Below are positions 20,166 to 26,600 of a stretch of 64,000 nucleotides of DNA, in pieces. The notes beneath the pieces were generated by a model, which saw only the letters and a list, made by a program, of their open reading frames with translations, had not been told where the DNA came from and did not search any database. Origin of the DNA: Isurus oxyrinchus (lineage: Eukaryota); the NCBI GenBank assembly GCA_026770705.1, contig JANJGN010000546.1:124001-188000 (forward strand), in the 5' to 3' direction. The position numbers and the translations under genes are program-made. How positions within the stretch are numbered: position 1 is the first letter of the stretch; each line of letters starts with the position of its first letter.

Positions 20166-20355
20166 TGTATTAACAGATGTAAAATTATACATAATTCAAA
20201 GCTTCTCACAATCTTTTACAGCATGGAAAAAGGTGCAGCATTCAGAAAGCTCACTCAGAACCAATCAAAAAAGTTGAGCAACATCATATTTCTGTTCATT
20301 ACTATTTGACCATGTTGGCTGCACACACCCCACAGCCCCGCTCCCTGTTTCACAC

Positions 20356-20604
20356 TCAGTTTTTCTGGAACCTGATCTGTGCGTATTCCGTGTCCTCGCT
20401 CCTGTGCACAGTCCTGTCACCGCTGGGCAGCTTTGAAAAGTTGATGTTGGCGTAGAAAAGCTCGTCGGGTTTGTCAGGGTTCCCATGTCCAACATCGCCT
20501 CCCACTGGACCTTCAGAGAGACCCCGGGGAGCTGGGGTCTCCCCCTCACTAGTTGTGTCTCTGGTTGTGTTCCGGGGCTCAGTAATCAGCACGTTCTGTT
20601 TACC
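20356..20604 (-). CDS. Gene A terminal exon with ITIM and ITSM
   Basis: ctctgtag|GGT, phase 0. Ends ...PDELFYANINFSKLPSGDRTVHRSEDTEYAQIRFQKN*. LFYANI is ITIM-type and TEYAQI is ITSM-type, the same order as in CD33-related Siglec tails. Confidence 0.9.
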   Translation of the reverse strand, partial: GKQNVLITEPRNTTRDTTSEGETPAPRGLSEGPVGGDVGHGNPDKPDELFYANINFSKLPSGDRTVHRSEDTEYAQIRFQKN

Positions 20605-23600: not shown

Positions 23601-26600
23601 CTACAGAGAAATGGAAACAGAAGACATCCTCACATCATTTACTGGCACTGATAGGGTTAAATTATTGTGCAGCTTCGTTAATGTCAGTCGTGTCTCAGTG
23701 GGTTTAACTCTCTCTCCCATGTCTTATGAAAGAAACCACCTATGGCAGTGCAGTGCTCCCTCAGTACTGACCCGCCGACAGTGCAGCACATCCTCAATAG
23801 TGACCCTCTGTCAGTCTCGCACTCCCTCAGTACTGACCCTCTGTCAGTCTCGCACTCCCTCATTACTGACCCTCTGTCAGTCTTGCACACCCTCAGTACT
23901 GACCCTCCGACAGTGCAGCGCTCCCTCAGTACTGACCCTCCGACAGTGCAGCACTCCCTCAGTACTGACCCTCCGACAGTGCAGCACTCCCTCAGTACTG
24001 ACCCTCTGTCAGTCTTGCATTCCCTCGGTAATGGCTCTGGTGAGTGACGGCTTGGATTCTTCACTCAAGTGTCTGGTAGAGGCTCGATAACATGGACCTT
24101 GTAATCAGAGAGAGGAAGAGAGAGAGAGAAAGAGAGAGAAAGAAAGGGAGGTTGAGATAGAGAGAGAGACTGTCATGATGCGATCAATGGATATCATGTT
24201 ATTGGAAATTATTTTTATTCGCATAGGGGTTTAGTCTGTGTGTGTTTTAATTGGATTAAAGCCAGCCAGTCTGGGTATTTTGATGTATAGTAGTTTTCAG
24301 ATGTAAACTGAGGGATAAAGATGCAATTTGCATTTTTAAACAGAGCATTCAAGGCCTGAGCGTGAAATTTTAAACCAATCAACGTTTATATTACTAATAA
24401 AATTGATACTATGACAGAGGATTTATAGTTAGAAGAGATGGAGTTCAAAGGTCCTGATGATACAATGAGAATTTACATTCAAAGAGAAGAGCTGGGTATA
24501 ACTTGAGCAGTTTTGTGTGTGCAGAACAGAGGCTTGTAACATCAAAGCAGCTGTAAGCCTACACCTGAGTGCAAAGGAACCAAAGTGAAAGGAACCTCAT
24601 TTGGAATTTGTGAGGTGAAAATGCTTTGCCTGGTGTCTGCTTAAAGTCTATGGGTTGTATTAGAGGAGATTAGTTTGATAATTTGTTAAAAAGTTATGAT
24701 AATACTAGTTTGTAGCCATGTGCATATGTTTAACTTGTGCAAATTAATAAATGTCTCATTTAGTTTGATATAAACCCATCTCGAGAACTGATGGTCTTAT
24801 TCCTGAATTTAGAGCTGCATCTCAAACATTCCACTGGGAAATATAGGTTATGACAGTTGTTTAAAGTTTCCCTCTGGGATTTTAAACAACAGCCTTTACC
24901 AGTTGCTGTGTCATAACAGAGAGACAGAATGATACTGAACCATTGCTGACTCCACAGGTACAAATCAGTGGGTAACTGGGCTGGGAATCTGGGATATTTG
25001 TTGTCTACACACTGAGATTGAAGCTTTGGAGTGAGTGTAAACAGCTCCTGTACCTTGCGCATCACAGAGAGTGGACTAGGGGTCAATGCAATGTCTCTGG
25101 TCCCTGAAACTCTCTCCTCCGTCACTGTCTTCCTCCTGCAATAACACAATATCACACTGTGGTTATCACATAGCAGAGAGTCAGTGCAGCACAGACACAG
25201 GGCCCACTGTAACCTTACACCAATGACTGGGACTCTCTCTTTAAATCACTTCTGCACAAAGCACAGAATCAAGAAGCTTGACACCATCCACAACAAAGCA
25301 GCTCGATTGATCTACACCCCATCCCCCACATTAAACATTCACTCCCTCCACCATGAACACACAGTGGCAGCAGTGTGTGTACCATCTACAAGATGCACTG
25401 CAGCAACTCAGCAAGGCTCCTTCGACAGCGCCTTCCAAACCCACGACCTCTACCATCTAGAAGGACAAGGGCAGCAGACACATGGGAACACCACCACCTG
25501 GAAGTTCCCCTCCAAGTCACTCACCATCCTGACTTGGAAATATATCACCGTTCCTTCACTGTCGCTGGGTCAAAATCCTGGAGCTCCCTCTCTAACAGCA
25601 CTGTGGGTGTACCTACACCACATGGACTGCAGCGGGTCAAGAAGGCAGCTCGCCACCACCTTTTCAAGGGCCAATTAGAGATTGGCAATTAGTATTGGCC
25701 ACGCCAGTGACAGCCACATGCGATGAAAGAATTTAAAATCTCACAGCTCAGGAGGAAGCCACTCAGCCCATCGTGCCTGTGCTGGCCCTTTGTAAAAACT
25801 GTCTAATTAGTCCTAAACAAGTGTTTATATTAAAATCAAGTTAAATCTTCAGACTTACTTTCTCACACAGATGAAGATGAAGATTCCAGCCAGGAAAACA
25901 CTCAACATGATCCCAGCCGTGAACAATCCTACTGTCCATTTACTGGAGTCTCTACCTGTAAAAACAGCCATTAATTACTGCACTACAGGTTTACAATGAT
26001 GCTCCGATGTATCTCGAGAAGCGATACACTCACTCAGTATTTAAATACTCATTCTCGGGCGATGCTGACATTTATTGTCCATCCCTAGTTTCCCCTTGAG
26101 AAGGTGGTGGGGGGTCTTCCTCCTGAACCACTGGTTTGTCCCAAACTGGGAGAGCAGTTCAGAGGGCAGGTAAGAGTTAACCATGTTGGTGTTTGAGACT
26201 GGAGTCACTTATACACCCAGACCTGTTAAAATGGACAGGTTTTCCTCACTAAATGTGTAATTATATGTGTAATTTCTATATAAATGTATCAACTAACCTC
26301 ACTAAAATAATCAATTATCACCTCAATTTCACGCTGTTGTTTGTGGGATCTTGCTCTGCACAAATCAGCTATCGTGATTCTCGATGTAATCTATGTAACA
26401 TTTAAATATATTTTTTCTCGATGTAATCTATGTAATATTTATATATAATTTTTCTCGATGTAATCTATGTAATATTTATATATAATTTTTCTCGATGGAA
26501 TCTATGTAATATTTATATATAATGTTTCTCGATGTAATCTATGTAATGTTTATATATAATATTTAGTCGTTTGGGAGGAGAACCTGAGTATTGCTGAGAA

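What the first reader, a model, noticed from the sequence alone, without database searches (positions are those of the whole stretch)
20340..25750. Tandem duplicate tail cassette with both tyrosine motifs specifically destroyed
Seen: the three tail exons are duplicated with a period of about 3.0 kb. The proximal terminal exon keeps its acceptor, 249-nt length and stop, and its first half differs by one aa. In its second half LFYANI becomes FLYANP (ATC to CCC) and TEYAQI becomes TELAQI (TAC to TTA), each needing two substitutions. Its frameshifted middle exon is phase 0-0 and can be skipped. Inference: one ectodomain could be spliced to either an inhibitory tail or a signalling-dead (decoy) tail, a within-gene switch reminiscent of L-/S-MAG. 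The clustered changes suggest selection or patchy gene conversion.
Basis: partly seen in the sequence, partly recalled or inferred. Interest (0 to 1): 0.8.

Follow-up and report, generated by a model that had tools for sequence, protein, structure and literature searches.

The report
Shark Siglec doubled tail, spliced serially
A shark immune-receptor gene of the Siglec family carries its signalling-tail exons twice in a row, and RNA and related shark genes indicate that the two copies are read one after the other rather than as alternative live and dead endings.

Summary
The sequence observation holds. On the minus strand, tail exons A1, A2 and A3 (25135-23352) repeat as B1, B2 and B3 (22139-20356). 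A2 is dead. A3 reads FLYANP and TELAQI where B3 reads LFYANI and TEYAQI.

The decoy-switch reading is not supported.
- Spliced contigs from two RNA-type runs join a donor inside A3 (23368, 16 nt before its stop) to B1 (22139), in frame and across the assembly gap. The DNA run shows no such join.
- Seven of 28 fetched great white and basking shark Siglec models carry the same serial two-unit tail, joined ...AQIR|RKT....
- The "YANP" motif is not a private lesion. It is an old tail class, found in 22 of 31 lamniform tail units.
- The second half of A3 matches the great white internal unit at 32 of 33 residues. Only Tyr-to-Leu (TAC to TTA) is private to this genome.
- The near-identical first halves of A3 and B3 fit a recent gene-conversion tract of about 180 nt.
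- Contig ends also show TM joined directly to B1, so the first unit may be skipped.

No contig shows A3 used as a gene end, but this is not excluded.

The scan had already found the same layout on other pieces of this genome (s1-865407, s1-865411). I rate it an ordinary member of an annotated shark gene family, though I found no paper describing that family.

The parts
25859..25955 (-). Transmembrane exon. Its donor is AAA|GTAAGT and it ends two bases into a codon (phase 2).
   Evidence: tblastn of P0029 and P0020 maps here.
25054..25135 (-). A1, the first exon of the proximal tail unit. 82 nt, open frame, reads RKTVTEERVSGTRDIALTPSPLSVMRK.
   Evidence: It differs from B1 at 8 of 81 nt. No TM>A1 or A1>A3 joint was among the rows displayed.
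24003..24097 (-). A2, a dead copy of the minor middle exon. 95 nt (a 1-nt deletion) with stops in all three frames.
23352..23600 (-). A3, a terminal-type exon (249 nt including the stop) that is used as an internal exon. Its donor CAG|GTTCGA follows 23368. It reads FLYANP and TELAQI.
   Evidence: The joint 23368>22139 was seen in X15 and X17. It matches the great white internal unit at 32 of 33 residues.
23476..23653 (-). A tract that looks like gene conversion between A and B. It has 2 differences in 178 nt and covers the acceptor and the first half of the exon.
   Evidence: Fisher p = 5e-9 for the two exon halves.
23035..23168 (.). Assembly gap, lying inside the intron between the A3 internal donor and B1.
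   Evidence: It is spanned by the RNA joint. No spanning DNA contig was listed.
22058..22139 (-). B1, the first exon of the distal tail unit. It accepts splices from the A3 internal donor and from the TM exon.
20840..20935 (-). B2, a minor optional exon. 96 nt, phase 0-0, with its donor in a 33-bp minisatellite.
   Evidence: One X15 contig shows the B1>B2 joint. No B2-like peptide occurs in the 40 fetched proteins.
20356..20604 (-). B3, the true terminal exon. It carries the ITIM LFYANI and the ITSM-like TEYAQI, then the stop.
   Evidence: It matches the great white terminal unit at 31 of 33 residues. RNA contigs continue past its stop.
25269..25738 (.). Interspersed repeat at the 5' edge of the duplicated unit. 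The copy in unit B ends at about 22740.
   Evidence: with other copies at 18066-18466 and 58005-58412. Depth is very high.

Best explanation
**What the gene is.** This is an inhibitory Siglec-type Ig receptor gene of a lamniform-like shark. Its cytoplasmic tail is built from a two-exon module, X1 (82 nt) plus X3.

**How the module concatenates.** X3 holds a 5' splice site (CAG|GT) 16 nt before its stop codon. That site is in the same phase as the donor of the TM exon, so X1 plus X3-to-donor is a 315-nt (105-codon) cassette with matching phase at both ends.

**What happens here.** Two modules lie in tandem. The first X3 (A3) is spliced from 23368 to the second X1 (B1, 22139). The resulting tail reads unit A and then unit B and ends in B3 with the ITIM and the ITSM-like motif. 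Skipping unit A (TM>B1) would give the ordinary short inhibitory tail, so both forms end with the same inhibitory motifs.

**Origin of unit A.** It belongs to an old 'YANP' tail class and has since been partly overwritten by gene conversion from unit B. Its one private change removes the second tyrosine (TEY to TEL).

**Shown:** the duplication, the A3>B1 joint, the same join in relatives, and which ancestral unit each copy corresponds to.

**Inferred:** that A1 precedes A3 in the transcript, that the TM>B1 ends come from this gene rather than a paralogue, and any effect on signalling.
For: - **RNA joint.** One search shows a joint at 22138/9 to 23367/8 with GT..AG ends on the minus strand. 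Depth is 5053.8 in X15 (organism A) and 29.2 in X17 (organism B). It is absent (depth 0) from the DNA run X1.
- **Frame.** A1+A3int and B1+B3int are each 315 nt.
- **Skip form.** In one search, loose ends at 22139 (1 contig, 15 letters) and 25858 (2 contigs, 13 letters) read as the TM end and the B1 start.
- **Relatives.** Searches show that 7 of 28 lamniform homologues have two units joined ...AQIR|[RK]K.... All 7 internal units are the P-type.
- **Correspondence of units.** The second half of A3 matches the internal unit of P0016, P0029 and P0030 at 32 of 33 residues. B3 matches their terminal unit at 31 of 33.
- **Colinearity.** P0029 maps in order on the window, and its internal unit ends at 23367.
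- **Conversion.** Searches give 2 differences in 126 nt against 31 in 120, dS 0.03 against 0.47, and Fisher p = 5e-9. The first halves match at 44 of 45 residues here but at 36 of 45 in P0016 (the P0016 figure is my own count from the sequences printed).
Against: - **The RNA data are limited.** All four runs are short Logan contigs. 'RNA' is the tool's guess for X15 and X17, although GT-AG joints are seen only in those runs.
- **Contigs could come from paralogues.** Contigs at 95% likeness or more could come from near-identical genes elsewhere. DNA contig depth at the B1 and TM exons (about 2010-2070) is roughly three times that of neighbouring contigs (about 615-645), which suggests identical exon copies elsewhere. 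The TM>B1 ends may therefore belong to single-tail paralogues.
- **Missing joints.** No TM>A1 or A1>A3 joint appeared among the 15 of 265 joints and 24 of 877 loose ends displayed.
- **Relatives are predictions.** The RefSeq relatives are computed models, and I could not see the evidence behind them.
- **Use of A3 as a terminal exon is not excluded.** The sequence just downstream of it is partly hidden by the gap.
Confidence: 0.7

Rival explanations
1. A3 acts as a composite exon. When cleavage and polyadenylation occur downstream of its stop, the receptor ends in a tail without a working ITIM or ITSM (a decoy). When the exon is skipped or spliced through, the receptor ends in the inhibitory tail.
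For: A3 keeps an intact frame, acceptor and stop. Its tail has no ITIM consensus and no second tyrosine. The second half of the exon is conserved at 32 of 33 residues with the great white unit, and the single difference falls exactly on the tyrosine. The gap hides part of the downstream interval where a poly(A) site could lie.
Against: X15 and X17 have depth 0 in the bin 23110-23303, just past the stop, whereas the bin past the B3 stop has depth 21038 in X15. The tool warns that a hole proves nothing. None of the eight poly(A)-signal hexamers I scanned for (AATAAA, ATTAAA and six common variants) lies in the 183 nt before the gap. This is weak evidence, because the first canonical signal after B3 is also 1057 nt away. 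Homology to B ends about 20 nt past the stop, so no B-type 3' UTR was copied with unit A. None of the 28 lamniform models ends in an A3-like tail with TEL. All 7 two-unit models splice through.
Confidence: 0.12
2. Unit A is a decaying relic. Its inclusion is tolerated splicing noise, the functional product is the TM>B1>B3 form, and Y to L is neutral decay like the dead A2.
For: A2 is dead. Y to L removes a motif that all 7 internal units of relatives keep. TM>B1 contig ends exist. A1 against B1 gives dN/dS of about 1.
Against: A1 and A3 keep open frames and usable splice sites. The second half of A3 matches the great white unit at 32 of 33 residues. The A3>B1 joint contig has the highest depth of any displayed joint in X15 and recurs in X17. 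The serial layout is shared by two other species.
Confidence: 0.15
3. An assembly artefact. On this reading the two copies are allelic haplotypes or a collapsed or expanded repeat placed on either side of the gap.
For: A gap lies between the copies. No DNA contig that bridges it was listed.
Against: The copies differ by 0-26% from segment to segment and belong to two different old tail classes. The sequences on the two sides of the gap are not copies of each other. An RNA joint links A3 to B1 across the gap in two runs. Single great white proteins carry both units in this order. X1 DNA contigs cover both copies.
Confidence: 0.03

Closest known systems
RefSeq shark Siglec models with two tail units in series. 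Carcharodon carcharias: XP_041037239.1 (P0029), XP_041037234.1 (P0016), XP_041037072.1 (P0030), XP_041037157.1 (P0014), XP_041037065.1 (P0033). Cetorhinus maximus: XP_078389619.1 (P0001), XP_078389744.1 (P0015).
   Same: The order TM, X1, X3 (internal, P-type), X1, X3 (terminal) is the same, and so is the join ...AQIR|[RK]K... P0029, P0016 and P0030 also pair a P-type first unit with an N-type (ITIM) last unit. They match the second halves of A3 and B3 at 32 of 33 and 31 of 33 residues.
   Different: All 7 keep TEYAQI in the internal unit, whereas the window has TELAQI. In P0016 the first halves of the two units match at 36 of 45 residues, against 44 of 45 here. These are predicted models, and I found no paper that describes them.
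Mammalian CD33-related Siglecs (Siglec-5, -7, -8, CD33) and MAG
   Same: The V-set exon matches their solved V domains (E = 7.5e-16 to 1e-12), and the YFFR arginine aligns. The gene also has C2-set exons, a TM exon and a tail carrying a membrane-proximal ITIM and a distal TxYxxI motif.
   Different: This gene has two V-set exons in tandem, a doubled tail module and a proximal motif of the YxNP type. That the mammalian tails have one ITIM plus one ITIM-like motif is recalled, not tested here.
L-MAG / S-MAG alternative tails
   Same: An optional cytoplasmic exon that carries a stop could in principle give two different C-termini from one ectodomain.
   Different: Here the stop-bearing exon is left through a donor upstream of its stop. 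The observed product therefore continues into the second unit, and no transcript ending at A3 was seen.
Composite internal/terminal exon of the immunoglobulin mu heavy chain, which gives the secreted and membrane forms (recalled)
   Same: It is a terminal-type exon with an internal 5' splice site just upstream of its stop. Splicing and polyadenylation could compete there.
   Different: Only the splicing arm is shown here. No poly(A) site after A3 is documented.

Membership tests
Siglec (sialic acid-binding Ig-like lectin), inhibitory CD33/MAG-like type | An N-terminal V-set Ig domain related to Siglec V domains | tested here: met
   Pfam V-set (E = 2e-11 and 3e-13) and Ig_CD22 (E = 1e-8 and 2e-8) on exons 31740-32210 and 34622-35032. 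The best PDB matches are Siglec-5, -8, MAG, -7 and CD33.
Siglec (sialic acid-binding Ig-like lectin), inhibitory CD33/MAG-like type | A conserved arginine in the V domain that binds sialic acid (the YFFR context) | tested here: met
   The query's 'gpyffrief' aligns with Siglec-5 'GSYFFRVE'. Binding itself was not tested.
Siglec (sialic acid-binding Ig-like lectin), inhibitory CD33/MAG-like type | C2-set Ig domains followed by a single TM segment | tested here: met
   C2-set_2 and Ig_3 hits on 30606-30956 and 28021-28350.
Siglec (sialic acid-binding Ig-like lectin), inhibitory CD33/MAG-like type | A cytoplasmic ITIM, (I/V/L/S)xYxx(I/V/L), plus a distal TxYxx(I/V) motif. Both consensus patterns are recalled. 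| tested here: met
   B3 reads LFYANI and TEYAQI. A3 reads FLYANP and TELAQI and fits neither consensus.
Siglec (sialic acid-binding Ig-like lectin), inhibitory CD33/MAG-like type | Sialic acid binding and SHP-1/2 recruitment | not testable with these tools
   These need protein assays.
Lamniform shark Siglecs with a serial two-unit tail (annotated models) | The first X3 exon is spliced from a donor before its stop to a second X1 exon, in frame | tested here: met
   Joint 23368>22139 in X15 and X17. The module is 315 nt. Seven models carry the same join.
Lamniform shark Siglecs with a serial two-unit tail (annotated models) | The internal unit is of the P-type (Y-x-[NS]-P) | tested here: met
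   A3 reads FLYANP, and 7 of 7 internal units in relatives are P-type.
Lamniform shark Siglecs with a serial two-unit tail (annotated models) | The internal unit keeps TEYAQI | tested here: not met
   A3 has TELAQI (TTA), against 7 of 7 relatives with TEYAQI. This is a difference within the family and not a reason to exclude the gene from it.
Alternative-tail switch (L-/S-MAG-like, or mu secreted/membrane-like) | Transcripts that end in the proximal stop-bearing exon and have their own 3' end | tested here: inconclusive
   No contig of X15 or X17 lies in 23110-23303. Contigs cannot show RNA ends, and the gap hides part of the interval.
Alternative-tail switch (L-/S-MAG-like, or mu secreted/membrane-like) | Transcripts that bypass the proximal unit | tested here: inconclusive
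   TM>B1 contig ends are present in X15, but identical TM and B1 exons probably exist in paralogues. X1 depth there is about 3 times that of neighbouring contigs.

The most novel reading that the evidence does not exclude
A3 may be a true composite exon with three outputs from one ectodomain. Skipping it gives a short inhibitory tail. Splicing through it gives a long two-unit tail. Polyadenylation in the interval that holds the gap would give a tail with no ITIM or ITSM. On this reading, the private two-step Tyr-to-Leu change was selected in this species to silence the internal unit. That change sits in a 33-residue stretch otherwise identical to the great white unit. The phase-matched 315-nt module would then be a general route by which receptor tails gain and tune motif number.
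Probability: 0.12. Interest if true: 0.55.

Novelty: new member of a known kind. Interest (0 to 1): 0.3.

Why it matters
As it stands, this corrects an attractive but unsupported reading. The gene does not toggle between a live and a dead tail. It strings two tail units together, as several annotated great white and basking shark Siglec genes do.

The small general point is mechanistic. A splice donor just before the stop codon, in the same phase as the TM exon donor, makes the tail a cassette that can be chained in frame after tandem duplication. That is a simple route to receptors with several tyrosine motifs.

The loss of one tyrosine in this species is a testable natural variant for asking how the number of motifs affects inhibitory signalling.

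Tried and rejected
**Searches that gave nothing or could not run**
- The search for homologous proteins with A3 alone: 2 candidates, none significant. The tool only sees proteins of 45-143 aa for this query, so the blank says nothing about full-length relatives.
- Pfam on A3 and B3: no family, as expected for a tail that is probably disordered.
- tblastn of the tail exons against the whole window: no third copy. The second TM-like exon at 57134-57226 has no recognisable tail exons after it.
- Paper searches (listings and abstract starts only): nothing on shark Siglec tails. Supplements were not consulted.
- The look-up of encoding contigs for the great white locus was closed. I therefore could not compare nucleotides, introns or donor sites with the orthologue, or compute dN/dS against it.

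**Readings rejected**
- Haplotype artefact (see the rival explanations).
- The 'clustered selection on the two motifs' reading. Synonymous divergence is equally raised in the second half (dS 0.47), and the P-type is shared across the family.

**An oddity I could not resolve**
In two X15 junction contigs, the first base after B1 reads A where the window has G, both at the B2 start and at an X3 start (table 5c). Three other contigs read the window's G. I take this as allelic or paralogue variation.

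Full report
**1. What is in the sequence**

The gene runs on the minus strand.
- The TM exon is 25955-25859. Its donor is AAA|GTAAGT, and it ends two bases into a codon.
- The proximal unit follows: A1 (25135-25054, 82 nt), A2 (24097-24003) and A3 (23600-23352, 249 nt including the stop).
- The distal unit comes next: B1 (22139-22058), B2 (20935-20840, 96 nt) and B3 (20604-20356).

BLAST and a global alignment confirm that 23333-25750 matches 20337-22751. 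Identity by segment:

| Segment | Identity |
|---|---|
| 25750-25136 | 95.8% |
| A1/B1 exon | 90.2% |
| 25053-24491 | 95.6% |
| Middle of the unit (with indels) | 85-91% |
| First 126 nt of the terminal exon | 98.4% |
| Last 120 coding nt | 74.2% |
| From about 20 nt past the stop | none |

A2 has a 1-nt deletion and stops in all three frames. A3 reads ...EEFLYANPQVLRMSSGDGSVHREEETELAQIRFEHN*. B3 reads ...DELFYANINFSKLPSGDRTVHRSEDTEYAQIRFQKN*.

**2. The gap**

The Ns at 23035-23168 begin 184 nt past the A3 stop, in non-coding sequence, so reading frame is not at issue.
- The sequence on the two sides of the gap is not duplicated. That argues against two haplotigs laid side by side.
- The 2996-2999 offset between the copies includes the estimated gap length, so the true period is unknown.
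- An RNA joint spans the gap (section 3). No DNA contig that bridges it was listed.

**3. RNA-type contigs**

One search gave coded runs. I laid four of them on 20200-26000:
- X15: the tool's guess is RNA, organism A.
- X17 and X18: guessed RNA, organism B.
- X1: DNA, organism A.

All are Logan contigs. They show presence and joints but not RNA ends or expression levels.

*The key result.* A joint with minus-strand GT..AG ends links 23368 to 22139. Position 23368 lies inside A3, in the context CAGATCAG|GTTCGA, 16 nt before the stop. Position 22139 is the first base of B1.
- Depth is 5053.8 in X15 and 29.2 in X17. Depth is 0 in the DNA run X1.
- A3 up to that donor is 233 nt and leaves two bases of a codon, as the TM exon does. 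B1 is therefore read in its normal frame.
- A1+A3int is 315 nt, which is 105 codons.

*Other joints in X15.*
- Loose ends at 22139 (1 contig) and 25858 (2 contigs) read as the TM exon end and the B1 start.
- One contig joins B1 to B2.
- Three contigs, plus one variant contig, join B1 directly to an X3 start.

*What was not seen.*
- The joints 25859>25135 and 25054>23600 were not among the rows displayed.
- The bin 23110-23303, just past the A3 stop, has depth 0 in X15 and X17. The bin past the B3 stop has depth 21038 in X15. The tool warns that a hole proves nothing.

*A caveat on the source of the contigs.* X1 contig depth at the B1 and TM exons (about 2010-2070) is about three times that of neighbouring contigs (about 615-645). 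Identical exon copies probably exist elsewhere, and the TM>B1 ends may come from single-tail paralogues.

**4. Relatives**

Searches were made exon by exon. I left out the step of joining exons into a spliced model.
- A3 alone against 1.84 billion representatives gave 11 hits. The best, P0001, matched twice.
- The sources name them Siglec or CD33-like proteins of Cetorhinus maximus and Carcharodon carcharias. More distant ones come from Stegostoma, Hemiscyllium, Scyliorhinus and Mustelus.
- Of 28 lamniform proteins fetched, 25 have at least one tail unit and 7 have two in series, joined ...AQIR|[RK]K.... This is the same join as the RNA joint. Some of the 28 are isoforms of one gene, so they are not independent.
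- P0029 (XP_041037239.1, 645 aa) maps in order on the window. Its internal unit aligns best to A3 (82.6%, ending at 23367). Its terminal unit aligns best to B3 (92.5%).
- These are predicted models, and I could not see the evidence behind them.

**5. Why the second half of A3 looks 'destroyed'**

The family has two tail classes:
- N-type: ...LLYANINFSKLPSGDRTVHRSEDTEYAQIRFQKN, which carries the ITIM.
- P-type: ...LLYANPQVFRVPSGDG.VHREEETEYAQIRFKRN.

Among 31 lamniform units, 22 are P-type and 9 are N-type. All 7 internal units are P-type. All 11 non-lamniform shark homologues have isoleucine at Y+3. The ITIM is therefore ancestral, and YxNP is an older derived class, not a lesion of this gene.

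Each copy corresponds to a different unit in the great white:
- The second half of A3 matches the internal unit of P0016, P0029 and P0030 at 32 of 33 residues. The only difference is Tyr to Leu.
- The second half of B3 matches their terminal unit at 31 of 33.
- A3 against B3 is only 18 of 33.

Synonymous divergence agrees with this: dS is 0.47 in the second half and 0.03 in the first. In the second half, 23 of 40 codons differ and 7 carry two or more changes.

The first halves match at 44 of 45 residues here but at 36 of 45 in P0016 (my count from the sequences printed). At the nucleotide level, 23653-23476 has 2 differences in 178 nt, between denser flanks. Fisher's test on the two exon halves gives p = 5e-9.

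The only private loss is therefore TAC to TTA. One other unit in the family, P0018 with TEFTQI, has also lost this tyrosine.

**6. Mechanism**

The tail is a phase-matched cassette. Tandem arrangement lets the first X3 serve as an internal exon through the donor that already lies before its stop. B3 has the same site as CAG|GTTCCA, while A3 has CAG|GTTCGA with G at +5.

The product carries unit A and then unit B:
- Unit A has FLYANP. This is still a Y-x-N context, the Grb2-SH2 preference as I recall it. Unit A has no second tyrosine.
- Unit B has the ITIM and the ITSM-like motif.
- The skip form carries unit B alone. Both forms remain inhibitory by motif content.

Signalling effects are inferred, not shown.

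**7. Family identity and setting**
- The V-set exons hit Pfam V-set and Ig_CD22.
- They also match solved Siglec-5, -8, -7, MAG and CD33 V domains, with the YFFR arginine aligned.
This recalls the human HAMP-MAG-CD22 neighbourhood, which I also cite from memory.

**8. Rivals**
- The decoy isoform would need a 3' end after A3. Nothing supports this, and the gap prevents exclusion (confidence about 0.12).
- A decaying relic is possible for the Y-to-L change. It fits poorly with the conserved frame, the 32 of 33 match and the recurrent joint (about 0.15).
- An assembly artefact is unlikely (about 0.03).

**9. Novelty**

Three paper searches (listings and abstract starts only) found nothing on shark Siglec tails. 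The layout is, however, already present in RefSeq models. This scan had also noted it on other pieces of the same genome (s1-865407, s1-865411). I rate it as a new member of an annotated kind, with modest interest.

**10. Limits**
- The RNA evidence is contigs only, the run identities are coded, and the RNA label is a guess.
- Supplements of papers were not seen.

Noticed in passing
window 20840-20935 and 20715-20870 (minus strand): B2 is an open 96-nt exon whose donor lies in a 33-bp minisatellite. One X15 contig joins B1 to it, but none of the 40 fetched homologues contains a B2-like peptide. It is probably a minor, lineage-specific exon made from repeat sequence.
   Followed up: partly
window 25054-25135 vs 22058-22139: Exon A1/B1 is more diverged (90.2%; 6 non-synonymous and 2 synonymous changes) than the introns on either side (95.6-95.8%). 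The variant residues (TVTEE, SVMR) recur in other family members, which suggests patchy conversion among paralogues.
   Followed up: partly
window 23362-23368 vs 20366-20372: The A3 internal donor is CAG|GTTCGA, with G at +5. The same site in B3 is CAG|GTTCCA. The copy that is used as an internal exon therefore has the better donor.
   Followed up: no
window 25269-25738, 22270-22740, 18066-18466, 58005-58412: A high-copy interspersed repeat sits at the 5' edge of the duplicated unit, and the A/B homology ends about 12 nt beyond it. Repeat-mediated unequal recombination is a possible origin of the tandem layout.
   Followed up: partly
window 49344-50834 and 57131-57229 (minus strand): There is a partial extra gene copy here: a V-like exon at about 50553-50834 and a C2 exon at 49344-49751. 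There is also a second TM-like exon at 57131-57229 with no recognisable tail exons after it in the window.
   Followed up: no
window 1129-1452 (minus strand): A weak V-set-like match (30-32% to P0020, E about 5e-9) lies on the side of the window nearer the hepcidin gene. It may be another Ig-family gene.
   Followed up: no
window 21319-21490: An insertion of about 170 nt is present in unit B only. Contigs of X15, X17 and X18 join 24502 to 21570 around it. These are probably copies or alleles that lack the insertion.
   Followed up: no
window 12000-16000, 44500-45900 and 59900-63900: GC content (0.62-0.63) and GC skew (down to -0.98) are extreme at 12-16 kb. Long 33-nt tandem arrays elsewhere give very long spurious ORFs on both strands.
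   Followed up: no
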